NCBI RefSeq assembly: GCF_006345805.1
Contig: NW_021825894.1
Location: 1-14,158, forward strand
Length of the DNA stretch: 14,158 bases
Reading direction: 5' to 3'
Source of the DNA: Octopus sinensis
Lineage: Eukaryota
Shown here: positions 207-14,158 of the stretch, piece by piece
How positions within the stretch are numbered: position 1 is the stretch's first letter
Layout of the letters: the number at the start of each line of letters is the position of its first letter
The notes under the pieces: generated by a model
What the model was told of the DNA's origin: nothing
The model's input: only the letters and a program-made list of their open reading frames with translations
Databases searched by the model: none
Made by a program: the position numbers and the translations under genes

Positions 207-809
207 ACTATATATAATGTGTGTGTGTGTGTGTGTGTGGTAGTATATATGTGTGTGTGTGTGTGTGTGTGTATGTATATATATATGTGTGTGTGTGTAT
301 GGATATATGTGTGGTGTGTGTCTGTGTATGTATATATATATGTGTGTGTGTATGTATGTATGTATATATGTATGTGTGTATGTATATGTATGTGTGTGTG
401 TGTGTATGTATATATGTATGTGTGTGTGTATGTATATATATGTGTGTGTATGTATATATATGTGTGTGTGTATGTATATATATGTGTGTGTGTATGTATA
501 TATATGGGTGGTATGTATATATATGTGTTGGGTATGTATATATATGTGTGTGTGTATGTATATATATATATATGTGTGTGTGTATGTATATATATATGTG
601 GTGTGTGTATGTATAATATAGTGTGTGTATGTATATATATGTGATTAATTATAAGATGTATATAGATGTATATATTATATATGTATATATAAGTATATAT
701 TATGTATATATATGTATATATATATGTATATATATATATGTATATATATATAGTACGTATATATAGAAGTATGTTTATATATATATATAATATATATATA
801 TAGATATAT

Positions 810-851
<42 letters not shown>

Positions 852-865
852 AGTATGTATGTAAT
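207..865. repeat. Compound (TG)n/(TA)n/(TATG)n microsatellite with a ~20-22-bp higher-order unit, grading into a (TA)n-rich tract
   Basis: Recurrent gtgtgtgtgtatgtatatatat units over 207-640, then a TA-rich tract. Confidence 0.9.
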
Positions 866-1220: not shown

Positions 1221-1323
1221 TACATACACACACTGCAAATACATACATGCTCAAATACATTCATGCGTACATACATACATACACACACACGCACATCATA
1301 CATACATACATACATATATATAC

Positions 1324-1598
1324 TGTAGTATGACTGGTGAAAAGAGTACAACAGAACAAGGAAAGGAATGGAAATGTAATGGGTCTTACCTGCCAGAGAT
1401 GAACTCGGATCGCCTTTAGCCAACTCGCTCGCGTAGGTCTTATCGGTGTCTTCGTCGTGTCTGGCGCAACTGGTCAATGCCGCACGTGCGTTCTGTCTGT
1501 CACTTCCGCTTCCGCCCGCGCATACGCCCTGCAAGACCTGCAAGCCCCAATCCACCCCCCCCCTCCCATTCCGTCACACTCCTTCACCTCATAACACA
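1324..1598 (-). repeat. 3' LTR of copy 1 (~275 bp)
   Basis: tgtagtatg...ataacaca; aligns with 5853-6118 and 7261-7521; adjoins the PPT and integrase end. Confidence 0.9.
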
Positions 1599-1607
1599 CG
1601 CCCCTGA
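1599..1607 (-). other. Short polypurine tract of copy 1 (equivalent at 7522-7530 in copy 2)
   Basis: Minus strand reads tcaggggcg|TG (copy 2: aagggggcg|TG) immediately before the 3' LTR. Confidence 0.65.
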
Positions 1608-1615
1608 TCTATAGA

Positions 1616-4360
1616 TCACTGAACCGGCTTCCTCACTTCACTCCCGCACCTGAAACTGGTTTCATAATCAGCCAACAAGGGAGGAGGGTGCTGCTCCCTC
1701 TGTGGTCGCAGTGCGACCTAGGACTTGTTTCTGGTGGTTGCTGCCTGCTGCCGACCTCATCCTGTATGTGTTTTCGTCTTGCCCACTGTTGCTTGTCCCA
1801 TCCTCTGGGGCATGGACAATCCTCCGTATGTCAAAAACGTGGCGTGTGGCATACTATCGACCGAGATGTTATTCTTTGAATTTACGGAGGTTATTGTCCC
1901 CTTTCCCCATTGCGATGTACACCGTGCTTGGGGGTTTTTACCAAGACTTCCTCCCCGACCTGCACGAAGGCGTGCTCTTCCTCTGCCCCGGGTCGCATTG
2001 ATGTAGTACACGGATGCCTCCACTCGTACCTGAATATTGCCCTGTGTGGCACCGACTCCTCAGCCTGTCCTGATCTGGGCGACATATTGTACCAAAAACA
2101 CGGCCTCGACTGGTGAAATGTGACCCTCTCTGCCATGGCTTGATGGTACGATGATGCCTTTCCACCACCCCGTTTCCACTTGGCCGGTATGCCGCCCTGA
2201 AGAAGCGGTGACCTTCCACTCATCAAGCATTTCTCTCAGCACATCCGAGCGAAATGCAGTGCCGTTGTCCAGAAGCAGTTCATCCACGGGGCCTCGTTCC
2301 AGGAATATCTGATTCAACACTTTCACAATTTCTTCTGCGGTCCCCGACTTCATCTCCCTTCATCCGCCCCGGTCCGCAGTCAACCATTGAGAGGTATGTC
2401 CCTGCCAGTGGTGTTATGTCCACCGCCGTCGTCTCCAGTCCTGGTCCACTGGAATACTTCCCGCTTCATGCACGACCGGAGCAGGGTCGATGGACTGGCA
2501 CCTGTCACAACTGCTAACACTCTCTGACAACTCTGTCTTGTTACGTCGGAGTCAACTTTTCTGGCTAGGAACAATGTCCTGTCCACACCCATGTGATGCA
2601 TGGTGTGTAGTCTCCGTAACTCCGAGTCGCTCAGACGGCATACTGCAGCTACATCCTGCTTCGCATCCTCTGGCACCTGCAAACAGGCTCGCTTTACCCT
2701 GGTCAGGACGTCTGCCCTGTTCTTCTCGGAAGGCACAAAGATCACGCTCAGCTTCAGATTGAACTCAGTGGTTAGTTCACGCAGTATTCCTAATCGACGC
2801 TTTACCAGCATCTCTGCAGCCCCTTTGGTCCGCACCCTCCGCTCATCGGTGATGACTGCTGTCGCCCAACAAAGTACAGTGGATGAATCAGTCCTGATTT
2901 CTATGGTGTGCAACCCCAACTTCAAGGCTAGGTTCACCCCCTTCAGCACGGCATCCAACTCCGCCACGTTGATATGATTGCAGTCATCCATCTTCCTGAG
3001 CCAGGCCGCATCTTCCACCGTGACACCTCCCACTTCCAAGACAACCCCTATTGCGATGCTACTGGCGTCACACCATACGATCCGGCTCTTTGATTTGGGA
3101 ACATATCAGTTGCCCCTCACTGGGTCCTCTGCTCCTACTCTGACCAAGACTTCCTGCATCATGTCGATTGTCCTCTCCCCCACTTTATCATTCCACTTCA
3201 CTCCTTCGGCTCGTCTTGATGAAGCTACATGCTGTCCGGAGCCAGCCTGCAATCGGGTAGTGTCCCACCAGCTTCCCACACACAGAGAACAGTTCCCGTC
3301 TACTCATGCTGGCGCCCAGTTCAGGGACCTCATTCCCTCGCCGGAACACACAGGCGCCGGGCCTTGTCTCTCCATAGCTTGAGGCCCAGTGCAGCACCCT
3401 CCCTAAGCCTCTGGCGGCTTGGCGATCAGTCCAAAACTCTTCAGGTGGCCTATGACCTCCGTTGCTGGTATCACGGTTTCATCCACTAGAATGTCGTCGA
3501 TGTATGAATTGGTGGCCCTTTTTACTCTGTCCACCCTTCCCCAGGATGGCCTTGAGAATTGTTGCCATAACTTCGGCGCTGAATTCAGCCCGAATCCCAA
3601 CCTGGTCAGACAGTACGTCCGGCCCCTATACCTGACGAGCTGGTACTTCCATAATTCTCAGCCACATGCACCTGTAGGTATGCCGACTTCAAATCGACAA
3701 TCGTGGAGGCCCCCGTCGTCTGCCTCCACTCTGCAAGGTGTCTCCGCAGACATCCGTGGCCTCGCCGCCTGTATGACACGACACGTGGTCATTCAGCTCT
3801 CGGAATTCGAGCACTGGCCTGACCTTATGCTTTGTGGGCTGTATCACCGCCATCAGTGGCATGACTCCGCTCTCTTCTTTTTCCCAGGGGATCAGTATGC
3901 CCTCCTTAATCCACCGCTCCACCTCCCCCTCGAACTCACTTCTGGCATCTACCTTTAGAGTATGCTGATAGCAGCCCACTTTATTCTTTAACATCGGGGG
4001 CTCTCCCTTCCAGTGCCACTCCACTGTCCACCTCTTGCCATCAAAGACAGCCCGAAAATCCTGGTCTTCAATGGTGTGCGCCGCATCCTTTTCCTCACGG
4101 TTGTCGTCGGTGCGTGGTCTCGCCCTACATGGTTTCCCCGCCCTAACCCAAACGTTACGCCAGCCTCGTTGACGCTGACACCTCCCAAGCGAGTGAGTGA
4201 TTGCATCCATCCCATCACCACTTCAATCTCGTCCACCAAGTGACCAACCACAATTGCTCGCAACGTCAGCTGTAGTCCCTGCACCACAATCTGCGCATCC
4301 GTAACTCCTTCGCAGTGCACTTCTCTTCCGTCGACTGCCCTAACACTGCTTCCTCCACTC
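1616..4360 (-). pseudogene. pol of copy 1 (protease C-half, RT, RNase H, integrase), frameshifted
   Basis: PR C-half SSVRAVDGREVHCEG...IEVVMG; RT VRPVL(E/D)FRELN, DLKSAYLQ, GFGLNSAP, YIDD (3493-3504); RNase H D 3067-3069, E 2959-2961, D 2887-2889; IN zinc finger HTMHH...C-x2-C, D 2418-2420, D 2267-2269, E 2160-2162 (about D35E spacing); likely stop at 1616-1618. Many 1-nt frameshifts. Confidence 0.9.
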
Positions 4361-4370
4361 AGGGCAGTCT

Positions 4371-4928
4371 AGAGGTGGACAGTGGAGTGGCACTGGAAGG
4401 GAGAGCCCCCGATGTTAAAGAATAAAGTGGGCTGCTATCAGCATACTCTAAAAGGAGATGCCAGAAGTGAGTTCGAGGGGGAAGTGGAGCGGTGGATTAA
4501 GGAGGGCATATTGATTCCCTGGGAAAAAGAAGAGAGCGGAGTCCTGCCACTGATGGCGGTGATACAGCCCACAAAGCATAAGGTCAGGCCAGTGCTCGAC
4601 TTCCGAGAGCTGAATGACCACGTGTCGTGTCATACAGGCGGCGAGGCTACGGATGTCTGCGGAGACACCTGGCGACAGTGGAGGCAGACGACGGGGGCCT
4701 CCACGATTGGCGATTTGAAAGTCGGCATACCTCCAGGTTGCATGTGGCTGAGAAATTATGGAAGTACCAGCTCGTCAGGTATAGGGGCCGGGACGTACGT
4801 CTGATCAGGTTGGGATTCGGCTGAATTCAGCGCCGAACATTATGGCAACAATTCTCAAGGCCATCCTGGGGAAGGTGGACAGAGTAAAAAGTCCACCAAT
4901 TCATACATCGACGACATTCTGGTGGATG
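4371..4928 (+). repeat. Inverted duplicate of the RT segment (partner of 3480-4035) inserted into the protease
   Basis: Plus-strand translation WTVEWHWKGEPP...VRPVLDFRELN...YIDD (4904-4915)ILVD; reverse complement of 3480-4035 with scattered differences. Confidence 0.95.
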
Positions 4929-5789
4929 CCACTTCCGTAGTCATCAGGGTCGTTGTACAGCCCGTGTGCCCACCAGGGCTCGCGACATCTTCCCCTTCAC
5001 CAGAATGTCGACCACAGGTAGCGATGATAAACGCGCCGCTTACTAATCCAAAGGGACGACTACCGGCGCAGTAGTCTCCCGCGGTCCGTTTCCCCCGCAG
5101 ACACTCGCTGGCTACATGCCCTGGCTCTCGACACCGGTAGCAAATCACCTCAGGCTTGGGCGACGCGCAGTCGGGGGGACCATGTGTGGGCCTTGGCACC
5201 GGAAACACTGTCCTTTGAACGATCGCACGCGTTCTTTCCTCAGCCCCTCTCCGTTGCTCCTAGCTGGGCCACTTTTCGACGTTACAGTCGCTGCTACCGA
5301 CGTCAACCTGCTGCACGAAACCAGTACACGTGCCCGCGATATGATATCGGCCATCGGCATCGAACGCACGTTCGGGAGCTTCTGTAGCTCGACCGACATG
5401 ATGTCGGGAAAGCCGGTCACGAACGCTAACCTAACCGTCCGTTCTAGCGACTCTCCCTCATATCCCGCCAGTTTAGCCAACCTTCTAAGCTCACCGGCGA
5501 ACACGTCCACCTGTTGTCCGATCCATCTCATTCTACCCAGCCGAGCGTACGCTTCAAACATTCCTTCCGCGAAAGCCTCCATAAGTCGGATCTCCACTTT
5601 ATCTGCGCTGAGTTGGTCCGTCTCCTCCATCTCTAAATATAACGCCAAGGCCGGGCCATCCAAATACAACGGCATAAAAACTAGCCAGGTCAGCTATACC
5701 GTGGAGCTTCGCCACCAAATTTAACCTCTTCAACCAACGACCACATCGGTGTCGCCGCAAAACGGTGTTATAGGCTCGTGTGAAACCAT
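4929..5789 (-). pseudogene. gag with zinc knuckle plus protease N-half of copy 1
   Basis: Probable ATG at 5789 (MVSHEPITPFCGDTDVV..WLKRLNLVAKLHGIADLASFMPLYLDG, read across frameshifts). ORF 5145-5675 is the gag body. CCHC knuckle CYRCREPGHVASEC at 5101-5142, with a degenerate CFRCQGPH just upstream. Protease ALV(D)TGCTTTLMTTEVA is truncated at 4929. Confidence 0.85.
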
Positions 5790-5852
5790 AGCACTCTGCA
5801 TAATTTTCTATTTTATTTTTTACGAAACCGAGTGATTATTGCCGAAATAGCT

Positions 5853-6118
5853 TGTAGTATGAAAAGAGACAACAGAAAGGAAAGGAATGGAAATGTAATT
5901 TGCGTCTTACCTGGCCGGAGATGAACTCGGATCGCCTTTAGCCAATCGCTCGCGTCGTGTCTTCTCGGTGTCTTCGTCGTGTCTGGCGCAACTGGTCAAT
6001 GCCGCACGTGCGTTCTGTCTGTCACTTCCGCTTCCGCCCGCGCATGCGCCGTGCAAGACCTGCAAGCCCCACTTTCCGCTCCCCCTCATTCCGTCACACT
6101 CCTTCACCATCACACCCA
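5853..6118 (-). repeat. 5' LTR of copy 1 (~266 bp)
   Basis: tgtagtatg...atcacaccca followed by TSD tatac; aligns with 1324-1598. Confidence 0.9.
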
Positions 6119-6159
6119 TATACAAGCATATACTACGTGCTTACATAATACATATATGC

Positions 6160-6383
6160 ATTTCTTTACTACCCATAAGGGGCTAAAACACAGAGGGACA
6201 AACAAGGGACAGACAAACGGATTATTAAGTCGATTATATCGACCCCAGTGCGTAACTGGTACTTAATTATCGACCCCGAAAGGATGAAAGGCAAAGTCGA
6301 CCTCGGTGGAATTTAAACTAGAACGTACGGCAGACGAAATACGGATATGCATTTCGCCCGGCGTGCTAACGTTTCTGCCACGC
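6160..6383 (-). mobile_element. tRNA-derived SINE, family A, copy 1
   Basis: Aligns along its length with 13733-13963. Minus strand has an A-box-like tggcagaaacg, a decayed B-box and the core gaggtcgactttgcctttcatcctttcggggtcgata. Resembles an abundant octopus SINE (recall only). Confidence 0.8.
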
Positions 6384-6589
6384 ACAATCATCTTGGTAGT
6401 CTACGCACATGCACAGAAGCAGACGCAAAAAACCCGCGCCTGCGAGCGCGCATGCATACGCACACACACACCCCCCAACAACACAGCAATCCAAACACAC
6501 GTTCGTAGATTGACTCAAAATGCGTGTCTGGCGGGGATGATGAACGACGAGAGATAGAGAAAGACTGAAGGAGACCAATAGATACACAA

Positions 6590-7110
6590 TCTACACACAC
6601 ACAAGCACAAACACACACGCACACATATACACTCACAACAAACACACACACTCACGCACACTACACACACACACACACATCAAACACAAACACCACGCAC
6701 ACATATACACTCACAACAAACACACACACTCACGCACACATACACACACACACATCAAACACAAACACACACGCACACATATACACTCACAACAAACACA
6801 CACACACATACACACACTAACAACAAACATACACACTCACGCACACACATCAAACAAACACACACGCACACATACACACTCACAACAAACATACACACAC
6901 TCACGCACACATACACACACCACAACAGACATACACACACTCACGCACACACATCAAGCACAAACACAAAAACACTCACAAAAACATACACACACTCACG
7001 CACACATACACCACCACTCACAAACAAACATACACACTCACGCACACACATCAACACAAAAAACACACGCACGCATACACACTCACACACACACACGCAC
7101 ACACACATTT
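6590..7110. repeat. CA-rich minisatellite with a ~75-79-bp higher-order unit
   Basis: cacaaacacacacgcacacatatacactcacaac recurs at ~6606, ~6685 and ~6760, then decays into sub-units. Confidence 0.8.
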
Positions 7111-7170
7111 GCAACCAATGTTTATGTGTTCTTATGATTGCAGACAATAGTGGTAAGTAAAGCAGAATAG

Positions 7171-7260
7171 TGGAGGACATAACCTAGTGGTTAGAAACAG
7201 CGGACTCGCGGTCGAGAATTCGCGGGTTCGAATCTCAGACCGGGGGAGGGGATGTGTGTG
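7171..7260 (+). mobile_element. tRNA-derived SINE, family B: 5' head, split by Gypsy copy 2
   Basis: A-box-like taacctagtgg (7180-7190) and B-box ggttcgaatc (7225-7234); sequence is interrupted by the LTR at 7261. Confidence 0.8.
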
Positions 7261-7521
7261 TGTAGTGAAACGGTGAAAAGAGTACAACAGAAAAAGGGAG
7301 AATGGAAAATGTAATTGGGTCTTACCTCGTCGGAGATGAACTTGGATCGCTTTTAGCCAACTCGCTCGTCTGGTCCCTTCGCCCTGTCTGCCGCAACTCC
7401 TCAATGCCGCACGTGCGTTCTGCCTGTCACTTCCGCTTCCTCCGGCGCATGCGCCCTGCAAGCCCTGCAAGCCCCACTTCCGCTCTCCCCCATCCGTCAC
7501 ACTCCTTCACCACACACCACA
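7261..7521 (-). repeat. 3' LTR of copy 2 (~261 bp, variant type)
   Basis: tgtagtgaaa...acacaccaca; homologous to the copy 1 LTRs but with a shorter, diverged central block. Confidence 0.88.
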
Positions 7522-7540
7522 CGCCCCCTTGATCTACAGA

Positions 7541-10331
7541 TCACTGAACCGGCTTCCTCACTCACTCCCGCACCTGAAACTGGTTTCATAATCAGCCAAC
7601 CAGGGAGGAGGGTGCCGCTCCCTCTGTGGTCGCAGTGCGACCCTAGGACTTGTACCTGGCGTGTTGCTGCCGACCTCGTCATCCTGTCTGTTGTTTTCGT
7701 CTTGCCACTGCTGCTGGCCCCATCCTCTGGGGCATGGACAATCCTCCGTATGTCCAAACGTGGCGTGGCATACTATCGACCGAGATGTTATTCTTTGAAT
7801 TTACGGAGGTTATTGTCCCCTTTCCCATTGCGATGTACACCGTGCGTTGGGGGGTTTACCCAGACTTCCTCCCCGACCTGCACGAAGGCGTGCTCTTCCT
7901 CTGCCCCGGGTCGCATTGATGTAGTACACGGATGCCTCCACTCGTACCTGAATATTGCCCTGTGTGGCACCGACTCCTCAGCCTGTCCTGATCTGGGCGA
8001 CATATTGTACCAAAACAACGGCCTCGACTGGTGAAATGTGACCCCTCTGCCATGGCCTTGATGGTACGATGATGCTGCCTTCCACCACCCCGTTCCACTT
8101 GGCCGGTATGCCGCCCTGAAGAAGGTGGTTGACCTTCCACTCATCAAGCATTTCTCTCAGCACATCCGAGCGAAATGCAGTGCCGTTGTCCAGAAGCAGT
8201 TCATCCACGGGGCCTCGTTCCGAATATCTGATTCAACACTTTCACAATTTCTTCTGCGGTCCCCGACTTCATCTCCCTTCATCCGCCCCGGTCCGCAGTC
8301 AACCATTGAGAGGTATGTCCCCTGCTGGTAGTGTGTTATGTCCCCTGCCGCTAGTGTGTTATGTCCACCGCCAGTCGTCTCCAGTCCTGGTCCACTGGAA
8401 TACTTCCCGCTTCATGCACGACCGGAGCAGGGTCGATGGACTGGCACCTGTCACAACTGCTAACCACTCTCTGCACACTCTGTCTTGTTACGTCGGAGTC
8501 AACTTTTCTGGCTAGGAACAATGTCCTGTCCACACCCATGTGATGCATGGTGTGTAGTCTCCGTAACTCCGAGTCGCTCAGACGGCATACTGCAGCTACA
8601 TCCTGCTTCGCATCCTCTGGCACCTGCAAACAGGCTCGCTTTACCCTGGTCAGGACGTCTGCCCTGTTCTTCTCGGAAGGCACAAAGATCACGCTCAGCT
8701 TCAGATTGAACTCAGTGGTTAGTTCACGCAGTATTCCTAATCGACGCTTTACCAGCATCTCCAGCCCCTTTGGTCCGCACCCTCCGCTCATCGGTGATGA
8801 CTGCTGTCGCCCAACAAAGTACAGTGGATGAATCAGTCTGATTTCTATGGTGTGCAACACCCAACTTCAAGGCTAGGTTCACCCCTTCAGCACGGCATCC
8901 AACTCGCCACGTTGATATGATTGCAGTCATCCATCTCCTGAGCCAGGCCGCATCTTCCACCGTGACACCTCCCACTTCCAAGACAACCCCTATTGCGATG
9001 CTACTGGCGTCACACCATACGATCCGGCTCTTTGATTTGGGAACATACCAGTTGCCCCTCACTGGGTCCTCTGCTCCTACTCTGACCAGACTTCCTGCAT
9101 CATGTCGATTGTCTCTCCCCCACTTTATCATTCCACTTCACTCCTTCGGCTCGTCTCTTGATGAAGCTACATGCTGTCCGGAGCCAGCCTGCAATCGGGT
9201 AGTGTCCCACCAGCTTCCACAACAGAGAGAACAGTTCCCGTCTACTCATGCTGGCGCCCAGTTCGGGACCTCATTCCCTCGCCGGAACGCCAAGGCGCGC
9301 CGGCCGTCTCTCCATAGCTTGAGGCCCAGTGCAGCACCTCCCTCCATAGCCTCTGGCGGCTTCGCGATCAGTCCAAAACTCTTCAGGTGGCCTATGACCT
9401 CCGTTGCTGGTATCACAGGTTTCATCCACTAGAATGTCGTCGATGTATGAATTGGTGGCCCTTTTTACTCTGTCCACCTTCCCCAGGATGGCCTTGAGAA
9501 TTGTTGCCATAATCTTCGGCGCTGAATTCAGCCCGAATCCCAACCTGGTCAGACAGTACGTCCGGCCCCTATACCTTACGAGCTGGTACTTCCATAATTT
9601 CTCAGCCACATGCACCTGTAGTATGCCGACTTCAAATCGACAATCGTGGAGGCCCCCGTCGTCTGCCTCCACTGTCGCAAGGTGTCTCCGCAGACATCCG
9701 TGGCCTCGCCGCCTGTATGGATACGACACGTGGTCATTCAGCTCTCGGAGTCAAGCACTAGCCTGACCTTATGCTTTGTGGGCTGTATCATCACCGCCAT
9801 CAGTGGCAGGACTCCGCTCTCTTCTTTTTCCCAGGGGATCAGTATGCCCTCCTTAATCCACCGCTCTCACCTCCCCCTCGAACTCACTTCTGGCATCTCC
9901 TTTTAGAGTATGCTGATAGCAGCCCACTTTATTCTTTAACATCGGGGGCTCTCCCTTCCAGTGCCACTCCACTGTCCACCTCTTGCCATCAAAGACAGCC
10001 CGAAAATCCTGGTCTTCAATGGTGTGCGCCGCATCCTTTTCCTCACGGTTGTCGTCGGTGCGTGGTCTCGCCCTACATGGTTTCCCCGCTAACCCAAACG
10101 TTACGCCAGCCTCGTTGACGGTGACACCTCCCAAGCGAGTGATTGCATCCATCCCCATCACCACTTCAATCTCGTCCACCAAGTGACCAACCACAATTGC
10201 TCGCAACGTCAGCTGTAGTCCCTGCACCACAATCTGCGCATCCGTAACCCCTTCGCAGTGCACTTCTCTTCCGTCGACTGCCCTAACACTGCTTCCTCCA
10301 CTCCCTAACACTGCTTCCTCCACTCCACGTG
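7541..10331 (-). pseudogene. pol of copy 2 (protease C-half, RT, RNase H, integrase), frameshifted
   Basis: Same motifs as copy 1: YIDD at 9436-9447, WCDASS, and HTMHHMG...SCDRC...WRRLAVDITH in ORF 8351-8860. Confidence 0.9.
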
Positions 10332-10421
10332 GAGTGGAGGAAGCAGTGTTAGGGCAGTCGACGGAAGAGAAGTGCACTGCGAAGTGCATGTGGAGTGGAG
10401 GAAGCAGTGTTAGGGCAGTCT
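10251..10421. repeat. Fold-back / template-switch junction with a tandem duplication and a perfect hairpin
   Basis: 10332-10384 is the exact reverse complement of 10251-10303; 22-nt tandem duplication (10282-10303 / 10304-10325); CACGTG at the apex (10326-10331); 10387-10420 repeats 10326-10359 with one mismatch. Confidence 0.92.
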
Positions 10422-10974
10422 AGAGGTGGACAGTGGAGTGGCACTGGAAGGGAGAGCCCGATGTTAAGAATAAAGTGGGCTGCTATCAGCATACTCTAAA
10501 AGGAGATGCCAGAAGTGAGTTCGAGGGGGAGGTGGAGCGGTGGATTAAGGAGGGCATACTGATCCCCTGGGAAAAAGAAGAGAGCGGAGTCATGCCACTG
10601 ATGGCGGTGATACAGCCCACAAAGCATAAGGTCAGGCCAGTGCTCACTTCCGAGAGAGCTGAATGACCACGTGTCGTGTCATACAGGCGGCGAGGCCACG
10701 GATGTCTGCGGGACACCTTGCGACAGTGGAGGAGACGACGGGGGCCTCCACGATTGTCGATTTGAAGTCGGCATACCTACAGGTGCATGTGGCTGAGAAA
10801 TTATGGAAGTACCAGCTCGTCAGTATAGGGGCCGGACGTACTGTCTGATCAGGTTGGGATTCGGGCTGAATTCAGCGCCGAAGATTATGGCAACAATTCT
10901 CAAGGCCATCCTGGGGAAGGTGGACAGAGTAAAAAGTGCCACCAATTCATACATCGACGACATTCTGGTGGATG
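10422..10974 (+). repeat. Inverted duplicate of the RT segment in copy 2 (partner of 9423-9983)
   Basis: Plus-strand WTVEWHWKGEP...YIDD (10950-10961)ILVD; same end points as 4371-4928. Confidence 0.95.
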
Positions 10975-11569
10975 CCACTTCCGTAGTCATCAGGTCGTTG
11001 TACAGCCCGTGTCCACCAGGGCTCGCGACAGTCCCCTTCACCAGATGTCGACCACAGGTAGCGATGAAAACGCGCCGCTACTAATCCAAAGGGACGACTA
11101 CCGGCGCAGTAGTCTCCCGCGGTCGTTTCTCCGCAGACACTCGCTGGCTACATGCCCTGGCTCTCGACACCGGTAGCAAATCACCTCAGGCTTGGGCGAC
11201 GCGCAGTCGGGGACCATGTGTGGGCCTTGGCACCGGAAACACTGTCCTTTAACGATCGCACGCGTTCTTCCTCAGCCCCTCTCCGTTGCTCCTAGCTGGG
11301 CCACTTTTCGACGTTACAGTCGCTGCTACCGACGTCAACCTGCTGCACGAAACCAGTACACGTGCCCGCGATATGATATCGGCCATCGGCATCGAACGCA
11401 CGCTGGGGAGCTTCTGTAGCTCGACCGACATGATGTCGGGAAAGCCGGTCACGAACGCTAACCAACCGTCCGTTCTAGCGACTCTCCCTCATAACCCGCC
11501 AATTTAGCCAGTCTTCTAAGCTCATTGGCAAACACGTTCCACCTGTTGCCCAGTCCATCTCATTCTCCC
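10975..11569 (-). pseudogene. 5'-truncated gag plus protease N-half of copy 2
   Basis: Intact DTG codons at 11005-11013 (ALVDTGCTT); CCHC knuckle at 11137-11178; gag breaks off at ~11569. Confidence 0.85.
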
Positions 11570-11624
11570 CAAGCCCCACTTCCGCTCTCCCCCATCCGTC
11601 ACACTCCTTCACCCACACACCACA
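11570..11624 (-). repeat. Remnant (outer ~55 bp) of the 5' LTR of copy 2
   Basis: caagccccacttccgctctcccccatccgtcacactccttcacccacacaccaca matches the end of 7261-7521 except for two C-run lengths. Confidence 0.88.
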
Positions 11625-11853
11625 GTGTTGTTATGGTTATGAGCAAAATACATAGCACCACGTGGCTCCGGCAGAAAGTAATGAAATAGTTACTTTCGCT
11701 GATTCTTTCACCACAACTTCCTCTCACACTTTCCTCCTGCATCTAGCAGCTCACATGCAAGGGACCGGTATCCTGTCCAGGTAGGGAACCTATACGCCAA
11801 TGAAAGAGGGAAACCGACCCTCATGAGCCAGGCATGACTCGAGAAGGACAAAA
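11625..11853 (+). mobile_element. SINE family B: body and 3' end, continuation of 7171-7260
   Basis: Begins at the Gypsy TSD and ends gagaaggacaaaa. Degenerate direct repeats at 7146-7169 and 11854-11874 (aatagtg...aagcagaata) bracket head plus body. Continuity with a recalled octopus SINE consensus is from memory. Confidence 0.7.
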
Positions 11854-12566
11854 AATAGTGATATAAGCAGAATATCGAACACCTAATGAAGAATTTATTT
11901 TGCTTTACTATAAAAAAAAATCTCTAAAAAGATCTTCAAACAGTTTAATAGACAGACAATATTTTTTATATTCATTTAAATACTTACCATGTTTATAAGT
12001 ATATTTTCTTGACCACACGAATGATTATAACTTGAGGAAGCAGAATTTCGTTTCCATCATCTTTATTTTTAACGTCACATTCTTTACTTCTCACTATTTA
12101 TAATAAAATATATTATGGAATGTATTGCGAGTGAGGTATATGTTTCTGGTTGGAACCCCAGGTTTCTCTCCTGAAATGGCCTGGTTAACAGTTCATCGGG
12201 TACAGGAATGCTACCGGACACCTTGTCACTATGTTATGCTACCAACCAGCATGTTAGATTGGGTGCTTAAGAACTCAAAGGTGCATAAAACAACCTCACA
12301 CAAACATAAAAACAAGCTGAAGATGTCTGTTACTTCACCCTAGTCTTCAGATGTCTGGGTACGCCCCTGGCGCACACATTCCCTAGCCTCTAATCACCGA
12401 GAAAGGTTGTGAAGAGACTGAAGAGTTTTCAAACCAAATCTCACGAAAAAAAAAAAAAAACGTCAACGATATTGTGACGTCATAAACACAATATGGAAAC
12501 AATTATATTACTTGGATTAGAAAGTAGATAGATGCTTCAATCTCATTCTCTGGTCTGTCTTTCTGT

Positions 12567-12961
12567 CGCGCGCGCGCGCACACACTCACAAACACACACG
12601 CAAATGCACACACACACATACACACAATTATTCAAATTTATTCAATACACACATATGACATGTGTATGCGTTTGTGAGTATGTATGTATGTATGTATGTA
12701 TGTATGTATGTATGTATGTATGTATGTATGTATGTATGTATGTACGTATGCATGCATGTATGGGTATGTATGCATGTATGTATGTAGGTATGGGTGTCTT
12801 TTCATGTATGTATGTATGTATGTGTGTGTATATACATGTATGTATGTATCTATGTGTGTATACATATATAAATATATAATACATATGCATATGTATGCAT
12901 ATATTATTGTTATAGACATACTCATATACGCACATACATGCATACATACATACATACATAC
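12567..12961. repeat. Compound (CG)n(CA)n, (TATG)n and (TACA)n microsatellite
   Basis: Direct reading; long pure TATG run at ~12679-12743. Confidence 0.9.
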
Positions 12962-13278
12962 AGGAATAGGACTTCGTAGTCATAAAACGAGACAGATGAG
13001 TGACAACTGGCCACTGGTGGTGGTGGAACACACATTACTAATTATATCGTCGGAGATCTGGAAGAGAGGTAATTCGGCAGGAGGACTTAAACGACATGCA
13101 AAGGACATGAAGCCCAGTTACAACTACAGACGGTTATTACCGGTAAAGGTTTTAGCTGCCAATTCTGTACAAGACATTGTAGATCTTTAGCTGGGCTAAA
13201 AAGTCACATCGATCACAGCACCAATAACAGTTAAGCTTCGTGCAATGGCCATACGCGATAACGAGGGGGAAGCCATAA
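12962..13278 (+). mobile_element. Probable 3' end of a non-LTR retrotransposon (RTE-like) with a C2H2 zinc finger
   Basis: 13157-13234 translates CQFCTRHCRSLAGLKSHIDHSTNNS* (C-x2-C-x12-H), similar to the C-terminal finger of RTE-type ORF2. Upstream frame is broken; a short 3' tail follows. Confidence 0.5.
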
Positions 13279-13289
13279 TGTATGTTATG

Positions 13290-13321
<32 letters not shown>

Positions 13322-13505
13322 TGTATGTATGTATGTATGTATGTATGTATGCATGCATGCATACACGTATGCATGTATGTTTGTGTGCATACATACATAC
13401 ATACATACACACATACATACATACATACATTACATACATACATACGTACGTACGTACGTACGTACGTACGTACATAGAACATACATAAACACACACACAC
13501 ACACA
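13279..13505. repeat. (TATG)n, (TACA)n, (TACG)n and (CA)n compound microsatellite
   Basis: Direct reading; self-complementary (TACG)n at ~13443-13471. Confidence 0.9.
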
Positions 13506-13732
13506 TTTGTATACGTGCAATTATGTCACGCGAGAATCCTGTTGTTAACCCAGAATCAGTGCAATCCGCTGCATGTTTTTGTCGCCGACAATGAACTTGT
13601 GATTCTACCAGTTTAGTTGTCGGTGAGGAGGGTGAGGTGATTTTCGACACACCGGGCAAGACCATCCCCCACAGAGTCCCCTCCTCCAAGAACTATGAAA
13701 CGGACCAATAGAATCATGGTAATCCAATAATT

Positions 13733-13963
13733 ATTTCTTTACTACCCACAAGGGGCTAAACACAGAGGGGGACAAACAAGGATGACAAAACGGATTAAGT
13801 CGATTATATCGACCCCAGTGCGTAACTGGTACTTAATTTATCGACCCCGAAAGAATGAAAGGCAAAGTCGACTCGGCGGAATTTGAACTCAGAACGCAGC
13901 GGCGGACGAAATACCGCAAGGCATTTTGGCCGGCGTGCTAACGTTCCTGCCAGCTCGCCGCCT
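13733..13963 (-). mobile_element. tRNA-derived SINE, family A, copy 2 (better preserved)
   Basis: Minus strand begins aggcggcgagctggcaggaacg; B-box gagttcaaattcc at 13878-13890; aligns with 6160-6383. Confidence 0.82.
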
Positions 13964-14158
13964 TATGGTAATCAATAATACTGGGGTACTACGCATATGG
14001 GGGTCGGCAAAATATTGCCAGTTGTGTGGTTTCAGATGCATGGCTGAGTGGTAGGCAGAGGAAGAGTTGCTGTTCTCAATATTGAACGAGAATGGTTAAT
14101 TTGGAGAGCTTTTGCTGTTGTGTTCCTTCATTTCATCCACTCATCTTTATCTTCTCAT

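What the first reader, a model, noticed from the sequence alone, without database searches (positions are those of the whole stretch)
1324..11624. The same rearranged, protease-broken Gypsy at two independent insertion sites
Both elements share the left junction (agggcagtc|tagaggtggac at 4361-4380 and 10412-10431) and the right junction (gtggatg|ccacttccgtag at 4922-4940 and 10968-10986). Yet their TSDs differ (TATAC vs GTGTG/GTGTT), their targets differ (TA-rich microsatellite vs inside a SINE) and their LTR variants differ, so this is not a simple tandem duplication. Inference: either a hairpin-carrying non-autonomous subfamily was mobilised in trans after the rearrangement, or the internal region was copied between two neighbouring insertions by ectopic gene conversion. 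An element that spreads while carrying a long hairpin against its own RT would be unusual.
Basis: partly seen in the sequence, partly recalled or inferred. Interest (0 to 1): 0.8.

Follow-up and report, generated by a model that had tools for sequence, protein, structure and literature searches.

The report
Broken retrotransposon copied into its neighbour
Two neighbouring octopus LTR retrotransposons carry the same inverted duplication inside their protease gene, most likely because one copy's middle was pasted into the other by gene conversion, a known process, and not because a hairpin-carrying element is spreading.

Summary
Two LTR elements, both coding on the minus strand, lie 1.1 kb apart: A at 1324-6116 and B at 7261-11624. 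They have different 5-bp target-site duplications, flanks and LTR variants, yet share both junctions of a ~560-nt inverted copy of an RT segment.

Four canonical relatives in Octopus sinensis lack this insert. It is therefore an insertion, placed 12-14 codons after the protease DTG.

B keeps the fold-back centre (…CCACGT|GGAGTGG…). A has lost 108 nt there. This points to one ancestral template-switch event.

The new result is that B is a mosaic. In the centre (A 1855-5284), 29 informative sites group A with B and 1 groups A with the canonical copy L001. In both internal ends the counts are 0 and 10 (p=1e-8). Substitution divergence between A and B is 1.07% in the centre, 4.6-7% in the ends and about 8% in the LTRs. 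A's own LTR pair differs by 3.5%.

The best explanation (about 0.6) is ectopic gene conversion from A into an independently inserted neighbour. A mobile hairpin subfamily made by RT recombination remains possible (about 0.17). An assembly artefact is possible too (about 0.08), since the window is indel-noisy. The labels "Gypsy" and "inside a SINE" are not verified. This is an ordinary process in a clear example.

The parts
1324..6116 (-). Element A: complete LTR retrotransposon carrying the inverted insert; inferred donor
   Evidence: Self-BLAST. LTR pair 1324-1598 and 5853-6116 differs by 3.5% substitutions. Pfam domains on the minus strand.
1319..1323 (.). TSD of A (TATAC), left copy; the right copy is at 6117-6121
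   Evidence: The target is a TA/CA microsatellite.
1324..1598 (-). A, 3' LTR in element sense (TGTAG...ACACA on the + strand)
5853..6116 (-). A, 5' LTR in element sense
2063..2359 (-). Integrase core (rve) fragment of A
   Evidence: Pfam PF00665, E=4e-5.
2383..3105 (-). RNase H (RVT_3 / RNase_H type) open frame of A
   Evidence: Pfam. 92% amino-acid identity to Octopus sinensis LOC115217646.
3191..3478 (-). DUF7047 domain between RT and RNase H
   Evidence: Pfam PF23088, E=5.5e-16.
3480..4035 (-). Forward arm in A: the resident RT segment, in its normal context
   Evidence: It is collinear with canonical copies L001-L003.
4036..4360 (-). Spacer (hairpin loop) in A: second half of the protease and the start of RT
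4361..4370 (.). Left junction in A. It is a 9-nt inverted copy of 4332-4340 plus 1 filler nt. This is what remains of the fold-back centre after a 108-nt loss.
4371..4928 (+). Reverse arm in A: inserted inverted copy of 3480-4035
   Evidence: 95-96% to the forward arm. Absent from 4 canonical copies. It carries the lineage-specific states seen at 3755 and 3779, so it was templated from the element itself.
4858..5259 (-). Open frame covering the gag zinc knuckle and the first half of the protease. It runs across the right junction (4928|4929) and stops 23 codons into the reverse arm.
   Evidence: Pfam zf-CCHC.
1855..5284 (.). Minimal tract shared with B, in A coordinates (maximal 1795-5462)
   Evidence: Quartet-informative sites; coordinates mapped.
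7261..11624 (-). Element B: mosaic copy with its own LTR type and internal ends and an A-derived centre; inferred recipient
7256..7260 (.). TSD of B (GTGTG), left copy; the right copy, GTGTT, is at 11625-11629 and has one mismatch
7261..7517 (-). B, 3' LTR in element sense; 8-9% substitutions (16.5% in MAFFT) from A's LTRs
7774..11316 (.). Minimal converted tract in B (maximal 7717-11493), about 3.5-3.8 kb including the inverted insert
9423..9983 (-). Forward arm in B
10251..10421 (.). Fold-back centre retained in B. The canonical sequence runs to ...CCACTCCACGT and then turns into its own reverse complement. The stretch also holds a 22-nt direct repeat, a 6-nt filler and a second 30-nt inverted piece. 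The 108 nt at 10304-10411 are missing from A.
   Evidence: One search compared with the canonical site; self-complementarity; tandem repeat.
10422..10974 (+). Reverse arm in B
11570..11624 (-). Remnant of B's 5' LTR (last ~55 nt). It is joined to gag at about 11569-11575 by a short-microhomology deletion of about 520 nt (gag 5' end, PBS, most of the LTR).
   Evidence: (D19).

Best explanation
A and B are two independent insertions of related but distinct lineages of one octopus LTR-retroelement family. They lie 1.1 kb apart in the same orientation.

In the A lineage, a polymerase copying the antisense strand left its template at a 4-nt palindrome (ACGT) in the protease gene. This happened either during the reverse transcription that made A or later in the chromosome. 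The polymerase folded back and copied the strand it had just made, in three pieces: about 54 nt, 30 nt, then the 556-nt RT segment. It returned to the template 3 nt from where it left. The result is a ~680-nt inverted insert that splits the protease and makes a ~556-bp hairpin with the resident RT segment.

Later, a break or gap in neighbour B was repaired from A by ectopic gene conversion or gap repair. This replaced 3.5-3.8 kb of B's interior with A's sequence, insert included. B kept its own LTRs, internal ends and TSD.

Afterwards A lost 108 nt at the unstable palindrome centre. B lost about 520 nt at its 5' end.

Shown directly: separate insertions, a single origin of the insert, the insert's anatomy, and B's mosaic structure. 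Inferred: the polymerase involved, the A-to-B direction, and DNA-level conversion as the means of transfer.
For: 1. Separate insertions. TSDs, flanks and LTRs all differ.

2. The insert is an insertion. Canonical copies in O. sinensis (two in L001, plus L002 and L003) join gag directly to the spacer and lack the reverse arm.

3. The insert is self-templated and arose once. All four arms share lineage-specific states. Three sites split forward from reverse arms in both copies, and none splits A from B.

4. B's form of the junction is ancestral. B retains the canonical 'cacgt' followed by an exact fold-back, which A lacks.

5. B is a mosaic. Quartet sites in the centre are AB|=29, A-L001|=1, B-L001|=0. 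In the two internal ends they are 0, 10 and 1 (Fisher p=1.3e-8). At the ends B carries L002/L003-like states where A and L001 share derived states.

6. Divergence differs by region. The A-B centre shows 1.07% substitutions (37/3466). The ends show 4.6% and 7.0%, and the A-B LTRs 7.7-8.8% (p=6e-12).

7. The centre evolved without selection after the split. A-B differences are even over codon positions (22/24/29). Differences shared by A and B against L001 are biased to third positions (22/15/66). LTR and centre should then have diverged equally if they shared a history, and they did not.

8. A was in place first. A's LTR pair (9/256 = 3.5%) is older than the A-B centre split (p=0.0035, or 0.024 if LTRs mutate 1.5 times faster). 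The donor was therefore A at this locus, and the recipient lies 1.1 kb away.

9. Direction A to B. Branch-length ratios in the centre fit 'centre = A lineage' (p=0.86) and not 'centre = B lineage' (p=0.023).
Against: - The source genome and its reads could not be searched, so other loci carrying the junctions cannot be ruled out. Only 4 other copies were sampled, all found through gene models, which favours intact copies.
- A tract of 3.5-3.8 kb that carries a 0.68-kb heterology is long for gene conversion.
- A reverse-transcription recombinant with two crossovers would give the same mosaic.
- B's LTR remnant shows 0 substitutions in 54 nt against its partner, which weakly favours a young B.
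- The 'A is older' argument rests on only 9 LTR substitutions.
- The window is indel-noisy, so some A-B differences are assembly errors and the dates are soft.
- The LTR distances (A-B 8%, A-L001 11%, B-L001 10.5%) do not reproduce the ((A,L001),B) topology seen in the internal ends.
Confidence: 0.6

Rival explanations
1. Mobile, non-autonomous hairpin form. RNA from the rearranged A lineage was co-packaged with RNA of another lineage. Reverse transcriptase switched templates at least twice. The recombinant cDNA had the foreign LTRs and ends and a rearranged centre. It was integrated in trans and so created B with its own TSD.
For: - B has a 5-bp TSD and the correct LTR termini.
- B's mosaic structure is also what template-switch recombination produces. 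Such recombination is frequent in LTR elements (PMC5668417, PMC6894440, PMC1950507).
- B's LTR remnant is identical in substitutions to its partner over 54 nt.
- The family clusters. L001 also holds two copies 3.3 kb apart, and insertions sit in TA/TG microsatellites. Adjacency by chance is therefore less unlikely.
Against: - The A-B centre coalesces after A's insertion. The RNA donor would then be A itself, an old element with a split protease, and its daughter would have had to land 1.1 kb from it.
- Two crossovers are needed, one near each end.
- 0 of 4 other sampled copies carry the insert.
- B's TSD has a mismatch.
- A 556-bp perfect stem in the template RNA should hinder packaging and reverse transcription and invite dicing (inference).
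Confidence: 0.17
2. cDNA-mediated conversion. A cDNA made from A's transcript did not integrate. It recombined homologously with the resident canonical copy B and replaced its interior.
For: - It gives the same mosaic.
- The tract covers nearly the whole internal region and ends inside the element on both sides, as expected if a cDNA is the donor.
- This route is known for yeast Ty1 (my own knowledge, not checked here).
Against: - It gives no reason why the recipient should be the nearest neighbour rather than any of the family's copies.
- It requires A to be transcribed and reverse-transcribed through its own hairpin.
- It is untested in animals for this family.
Confidence: 0.07
3. Assembly artefact. 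Only one copy really has the insert. Reads from the two ~95%-similar neighbours were mixed during layout or consensus, so one copy's centre was written into the other.
For: - The window is indel-noisy. A has 24 and B has 36 private 1-3-nt indels, over half of them in homopolymers. The L001, L002 and L003 copies have 0, 5 and 6.
- The indel-to-substitution ratio in the centre is about 2:1, which is typical of raw long-read consensus.
- Palindromes are hard to polish, so the 108-nt difference could be a consensus failure.
Against: - The two centres still differ by 37 substitutions, polarised as 20 private to A and 14 private to B.
- They also differ by a structured 108-nt segment and a 23-nt tandem duplication.
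- The tract boundaries coincide with real phylogenetic breakpoints.
- Reads of ordinary long-read length would span a 4.8-kb element together with its unique flanks (inference).
Confidence: 0.08
4. Simple tandem or segmental duplication of one rearranged element together with its flank.
For: The two copies have the same orientation, lie about 5.9 kb apart, and share the rearrangement.
Against: - The flanks next to the two copies share no homology, and the TSDs differ.
- The LTRs differ by 8-16% while the centre differs by 1%.
- The internal ends show a different phylogeny from the centre.
Confidence: 0.01

Closest known systems
Ectopic (interlocus) gene conversion between dispersed or neighbouring LTR-retrotransposon and provirus copies, such as yeast Ty elements (PMC3511429 discusses Ty recombination) and the human Y-chromosome HERV15 pair (my own knowledge)
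   Same: A tract of near-identity lies inside two homologous elements that keep their own flanks, TSDs and divergent ends. The tract and the flanks give conflicting phylogenies. Donor and recipient are close together and in direct orientation.
   Different: Here the tract also carries a 0.57-0.68-kb structural novelty, an inverted duplication, so conversion duplicates a hairpin-forming locus. The tract is long at 3.5-3.8 kb. The host is a cephalopod. The conversion is inferred from a single assembly, not from population or orthologue data.
Recombination during reverse transcription between co-packaged LTR-retrotransposon RNAs (PMC5668417, PMC6894440), and complex elements made by template switching (PMC1950507)
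   Same: These are mosaic elements in which the LTRs or ends and the interior come from different family members. The fold-back insert itself looks like a template-switch product with 0-2 nt of microhomology.
   Different: The nearest relative of B's interior is the adjacent chromosomal copy, and the split appears to post-date that copy's insertion. This fits DNA-level transfer better than transfer through a virus-like particle.
[quoted passage not shown]
   Same: A natural inverted duplication of a transposon's own coding sequence (here RT) that can fold into a long perfect hairpin. The predicted stem is ~556 bp with a minimum free energy of -1230 kcal/mol.
   Different: There is no evidence here for transcription, small RNAs or silencing. 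The element is a retrotransposon, not a DNA transposon. The hairpin lies inside an otherwise complete element and not at a truncated rearranged locus read from a flanking gene.
Fold-back inverted duplications made by replicative template switching (FoSTeS/MMBIR-type events) or by snap-back self-priming of reverse transcriptase (my own knowledge)
   Same: The turn occurs at a short palindrome (ACGT). Several inverted pieces are copied in proximal-to-distal order. There are small fillers and 0-2 nt microhomologies. The polymerase returns to the original template within 3 nt of where it left. The palindrome centre was later deleted in one copy.
   Different: The sequence cannot show which polymerase did it. 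The arm divergence (about 1.8-2.4%) and A's LTR divergence (3.5%) are statistically indistinguishable.

Membership tests
LTR retrotransposon or endogenous retrovirus-like element (general) | Direct LTRs ending TG...CA, flanked by a short target-site duplication | tested here: met
   A has LTRs at 1324-1598 and 5853-6116 with TSD TATAC on both sides. B has GTGTG/GTGTT. The canonical L001 copy has TSD ATATG.
LTR retrotransposon or endogenous retrovirus-like element (general) | gag with a zinc knuckle, and pol in the order PR-RT-RNase H-IN | tested here: met
   Pfam on the L001 canonical ORFs finds zf-CCHC in gag. In pol it finds gag-asp_proteas, RVT_1, DUF7047, RNase_H/RVT_3, Integrase_H2C2 and rve, in that order. 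The same pieces lie on the minus strand of the window.
Ty3/Gypsy (Metaviridae) | Gypsy-type RT-RNase H (Pfam RT_RNaseH / RT_RNaseH_2) and RT grouping with Ty3/Gypsy references | tested here: inconclusive
   No RT_RNaseH hit in the window or in L001 pol. The RNase H matches RNase_H/RVT_3 and is preceded by DUF7047. The nearest solved RT and IN are retroviral (MLV, foamy virus, MMTV) and Ty3 RT does not appear. No RT phylogeny with reference sets could be run.
BEL/Pao | Pfam Peptidase_A17 (Pao), DUF1758/DUF1759, DUF5641 | tested here: not met
   None of these models matched L001 pol or gag. None is in the precomputed Pfam lists of about 240 relatives.
Ectopic gene-conversion tract | A two-sided block of high identity flanked by more divergent homologous sequence within the same pair of repeats | tested here: met
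   The centre shows 1.07% substitutions against 4.6% and 7.0% in the internal ends and about 8% in the LTRs (Fisher p=3e-8 and 6e-12).
Ectopic gene-conversion tract | Phylogenetic incongruence between the tract and its flanks | tested here: met
   The centre gives ((A,B),L001) with 29:1:0 sites. The ends give ((A,L001),B) with 0:10:1 sites (p=1.3e-8).
Ectopic gene-conversion tract | The pre-conversion state of the recipient is seen at the orthologous locus or as a polymorphism | not testable with these tools
   The source genome, other individuals and sister-species loci cannot be searched here.
Mobile non-autonomous subfamily | The same internal rearrangement at several unlinked loci, each with its own TSD | tested here: inconclusive
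   Only the two linked copies are known. 0 of 4 other sampled family copies in O. sinensis carry it. The junction scans of JGI metagenomes found nothing, but those data are not expected to hold octopus DNA.
Mobile non-autonomous subfamily | LTRs and internal region of the copies share one genealogy | tested here: not met
   The LTRs are 8-16% apart while the centre is 1% apart. The post-split changes show no codon-position bias, so selection cannot explain the gap.
Hairpin-RNA silencer locus (Mu killer-like) | An inverted duplication of the transposon's own coding sequence able to form long dsRNA | tested here: met
   The arms are 556 nt long and 95-98% complementary, with a 335-nt loop in A and a 438-nt loop in B. 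The predicted fold pairs the arms end to end.
Hairpin-RNA silencer locus (Mu killer-like) | Read-through transcription and small RNAs from the arms, with silencing of the family | not testable with these tools

The most novel reading that the evidence does not exclude
The fold-back copy is more than debris. When transcribed from A's intact 5' LTR, it gives a ~556-bp double-stranded RNA against the family's own RT. In that reading it acts as a Mu killer-like trigger of small-RNA silencing in a cephalopod, and gene conversion has doubled the locus. Alternatively, the hairpin form really is mobilised in trans and has more copies elsewhere in the genome.
Probability: 0.12. Interest if true: 0.7.

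Novelty: new member of a known kind. Interest (0 to 1): 0.3.

Why it matters
The finding shows how a shared structural oddity in two separately inserted transposon copies can arise without the oddity ever transposing. The practical lesson for genome annotation is this: a shared internal rearrangement together with different TSDs does not prove a mobile subfamily. LTRs, internal ends and centre must be tested for a common genealogy first.

It also documents a long conversion tract (3.5-3.8 kb) carrying a 0.7-kb insertion between neighbouring retroelements in an octopus. It preserves, in copy B, the unprocessed centre of a fold-back template switch. If the locus is transcribed, it is a candidate natural hairpin source of small RNAs against an apparently still-active family, since the O. 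sinensis copy in L001 has intact gag and pol ORFs and LTRs 1.4% apart.

Tried and rejected
- Pfam on raw six-frame pieces failed because the translations contain stops. I used stop-free segments instead.
- A protein search with the ORF that crosses the right junction (4858-5259, minus strand) found nothing, not even for its gag part. The protein database evidently lacks ORFs of this octopus family apart from a few NCBI gene models, so it could not be used to count junction-bearing copies.
- A third protein search, with the canonical RT region, gave no new close octopus loci.
- Exact scans for both junctions in JGI metagenome contigs found 0 matches. No match occurs in the five fetched loci either.
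- The empty-site test for B joined its two flanks and searched 110 kb of O. sinensis DNA and the window. It found no second copy, so the 'SINE' target could not be confirmed. ARAGORN and Rfam found no tRNA or SINE there. The Rfam hits were all sub-threshold miRNA-like matches to microsatellites and to B's palindrome.
- PDB sequence searches did not settle the superfamily.
- Simple tandem duplication was rejected on flanks, TSDs and LTRs.
- Independent origin of the two inverted duplications was rejected. The junctions are identical, three forward|reverse-arm sites are shared, and no A|B sites exist.
- 'A is the mosaic, B the donor' was considered and disfavoured at p=0.023.
- MAFFT mismatch counts were inflated by paired 1-nt indels, so I recounted substitutions with a gap-friendly aligner.

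Full report
**What is there**

The window holds two LTR retroelements 1.1 kb apart in the same orientation. They sit among TG/TA/CA microsatellites. Both code on the minus strand.
- Pfam finds a gag zinc knuckle (4858-5259), a weak RVT_1 match (3406-3657), DUF7047 (3191-3478), RNase_H/RVT_3 (2383-3105) and rve (2063-2359).
- Element A is 1324-6116, with LTRs at 1324-1598 and 5853-6116 and a perfect TSD TATAC.
- Element B is 7261-11624, with an LTR at 7261-7517. Only the last ~55 nt of its other LTR survive (11570-11624). That remnant is joined to gag by a deletion of about 520 nt with short microhomology. B's TSD is GTGTG/GTGTT.
- The host is an octopus. The RNase H frame is 92% identical in protein to Octopus sinensis gene models.

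**Check of the observation**

Each element contains an inverted copy of a 556-nt RT segment. In A the forward arm is 3480-4035 and the reverse arm 4371-4928. In B they are 9423-9983 and 10422-10974. A four-way alignment of the arms gives three sites that split forward from reverse arms in both copies and none that splits A from B. The rearrangement therefore arose once.

**What the rearrangement is**

I fetched five O. sinensis loci through the homologues.
- L001 holds an apparently intact copy at 7842-12102. It has a gag ORF of 251 aa and a pol ORF of 986 aa. Its LTRs are 1.4% apart and its TSD is ATATG, in a TA/TG microsatellite.
- In this copy, in a second partial copy in L001, and in L002 and L003, gag joins the 'spacer' directly. 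The reverse arm is absent.
- The rearrangement is therefore an insertion: 568 nt in A and 676 nt in B, replacing only 3-10 nt. It lies at pol codon ~72, which is 12-14 codons after the protease DTG and inside the Pfam aspartyl-protease match.
- Translation from gag stops 23 codons into the reverse arm.

**How the insert arose**

All four arms carry states specific to the A/B lineage, at 3755 and 3779. The insert was therefore copied from the element itself.

B still contains the turn-around. The canonical sequence runs to ...CCACTCCACGT and then continues as its own reverse complement for 54 nt. Next come a 6-nt filler, a second 30-nt inverted piece, one filler base, the 556-nt inverted arm, and a return to the canonical sequence 3 nt beyond the point of departure, with a 2-nt microhomology.

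A lacks 108 nt here, including the canonical 'cacgt'. A's form is therefore derived by deletion of the palindrome centre.

This anatomy is a multi-step fold-back template switch. The window's + strand is the minus-strand cDNA, read in its direction of synthesis. A snap-back of reverse transcriptase fits, and so does a replicative fold-back in the chromosome. The data cannot separate the two. Arm divergence is about 2% and A's LTR pair differs by 3.5%, and these two values are not statistically distinguishable.

**How two separate insertions came to share it**

I aligned A, B and the canonical copies segment by segment.

- *Selection pattern.* A-B differences are spread evenly over codon positions (22/24/29). 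Differences shared by A and B against L001 are biased to third positions (22/15/66). A and B have therefore drifted without selection since their centres split. LTRs and centre should then be equally diverged if they shared a history.
- *Divergence by region.* They are not equally diverged. Substitution divergence is 1.07% in the centre (37/3466), 4.6% and 7.0% in the two internal ends, and 7.7-8.8% in the LTRs, or 16.5% in a MAFFT alignment.
- *Quartet sites, with L002=L003 as outgroup.* These make the pattern categorical. Between A 1855 and 5284, 29 sites group A with B, 1 groups A with L001 and 0 group B with L001. In 1599-1850 and 5381-5542 the counts are 0, 10 and 1 (p=1.3e-8). At those end sites B carries the L002/L003 state where A and L001 share a derived state. 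Mutation in B cannot produce that pattern.
- *Conclusion for B.* B is a two-sided mosaic. Its own LTRs and ends enclose a 3.5-3.8 kb A-like centre (B 7774-11316 at least), and that centre contains the insert.
- *Direction.* Branch-length ratios fit 'centre = A lineage' (p=0.86) and not 'centre = B lineage' (p=0.023). A is the inferred donor.
- *Timing.* A's LTR pair (9/256) is more diverged than the A-B centre (p=0.0035, or 0.024 if LTRs mutate 1.5 times faster). The centres therefore split after A was already inserted here.

**Interpretation**

A simple copy-and-paste of one rearranged master is rejected, and so is a tandem duplication. Some form of recombination is required.

Direct ectopic gene conversion or gap repair from A into its neighbour explains three things at once: the two-sided tract, the donor being the adjacent copy, and the timing. 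I put it at about 0.6.

A recombinant made during reverse transcription and integrated in trans gives the same mosaic, and such recombination is well documented in LTR elements (PMC5668417, PMC6894440, PMC1950507). It needs two crossovers. It also needs a daughter of an old, protease-split element to land 1.1 kb from its parent. I put it at about 0.17.

I put cDNA-mediated conversion at about 0.07 and an assembly artefact at about 0.08.

**Caveats**

- The window is indel-noisy. A has 24 and B has 36 private 1-3-nt indels, mostly in homopolymers. The three O. sinensis copies have 0, 5 and 6. Frameshifts in A and B should not be read as decay, and the dates are soft.
- The source genome could not be searched. 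The protein database lacks this family's ORFs. The metagenome scans were empty, as expected.
- Only four other copies could be inspected.

**Classification**

The gene order PR-RT-RNase H-IN and the 5-bp TSD fit the Gypsy, BEL and retrovirus-like groups. Pfam's Gypsy-type RNase H models and the BEL/Pao models do not match, however. The RNase H is of the RNase_H/RVT_3 type and is preceded by DUF7047. The nearest solved RT and integrase are retroviral. Relatives occur in molluscs, crustaceans, bryozoans, a sea spider and nematodes. 'Gypsy' is therefore unverified.

**Comparison with known systems and verdict**

Gene conversion among LTR-element copies, template-switch fold-backs and palindrome-centre deletions are all known. 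This is a clean new instance, not a new kind.

The inverted repeat would fold into a ~556-bp stem. In that respect it resembles maize Mu killer (PMC3440606), but nothing here shows transcription or small RNAs.

Interest is modest at 0.3. The value lies in the caution it gives for calling 'mobile subfamilies' and in the preserved fold-back centre.

Noticed in passing
window 6143-6380 and 13733-13965; L001 7491-7740; L002 7658-7874; L005 4318-4517 and 21262-21507: An abundant ~240-bp interspersed repeat, with at least 9 copies in 110 kb of O. sinensis DNA. A copy lies just upstream, in element sense, of the 5' LTR of A (26 nt away). The same holds for the canonical copy in L001 (~100 nt, across a TA microsatellite) and, less closely, for L002's copy. 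The family may prefer the TA/TG microsatellite tail of this repeat as its target.
   Followed up: partly
window 1599-5542 and 7518-11575: A has 24 and B has 36 private 1-3-nt indels, over half of them in homopolymer runs. The L001, L002 and L003 copies have 0, 5 and 6. The indel-to-substitution ratio is about 2:1. The window's assembly looks like poorly polished long-read consensus, so its frameshifts are unreliable.
   Followed up: yes
L001 7842-12102: An apparently intact, young member of the family in O. sinensis. It has a gag ORF of 251 aa and a pol ORF of 986 aa. Its LTRs are 1.4% apart and its TSD is ATATG. The family may still be active.
   Followed up: partly
L001 3218-4500 and 7842-12102: A second pair of family copies lies 3.3 kb apart in the same orientation. 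This suggests regional clustering of insertions.
   Followed up: no
window 3191-3478; L001 pol aa 426-483: Pfam DUF7047 sits between RT and an RNase H of the RNase_H/RVT_3 type. This architecture recurs in about 240 relatives from molluscs, crustaceans, bryozoans, a sea spider and nematodes. The superfamily placement of this lineage is unclear from the tools at hand.
   Followed up: partly
window 7160-7255: B's left flank looks tRNA-derived (…GGTTCGAATCTC…). ARAGORN and Rfam call no tRNA, however, and no second copy of the joined flanks exists in the window or in 110 kb of octopus loci.
   Followed up: yes
window 8314-8366 and 10268-10326: Two short tandem duplications private to B, of 23 nt and 22 nt. 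The second lies at the fold-back centre.
   Followed up: partly
window 5852 downward (minus strand); L001 8119-8145: The sequence next to the 5' LTR, where the primer-binding site should be, reads AGCTATTTCGGCAA(A)TAATCAC. It does not start with the usual TGG complementary to a tRNA 3' end. The primer is unknown.
   Followed up: no
window 217-863, 6593-7107, 12678-12861, 13278-13506: Long compound microsatellites flank the elements: (TG)n/(TA)n/(ATGT)n, a CA-rich array of ~31-nt period, and (GTAT)n/(CATA)n. They give many sub-threshold miRNA-like Rfam matches, which are artefacts of low complexity.
   Followed up: yes
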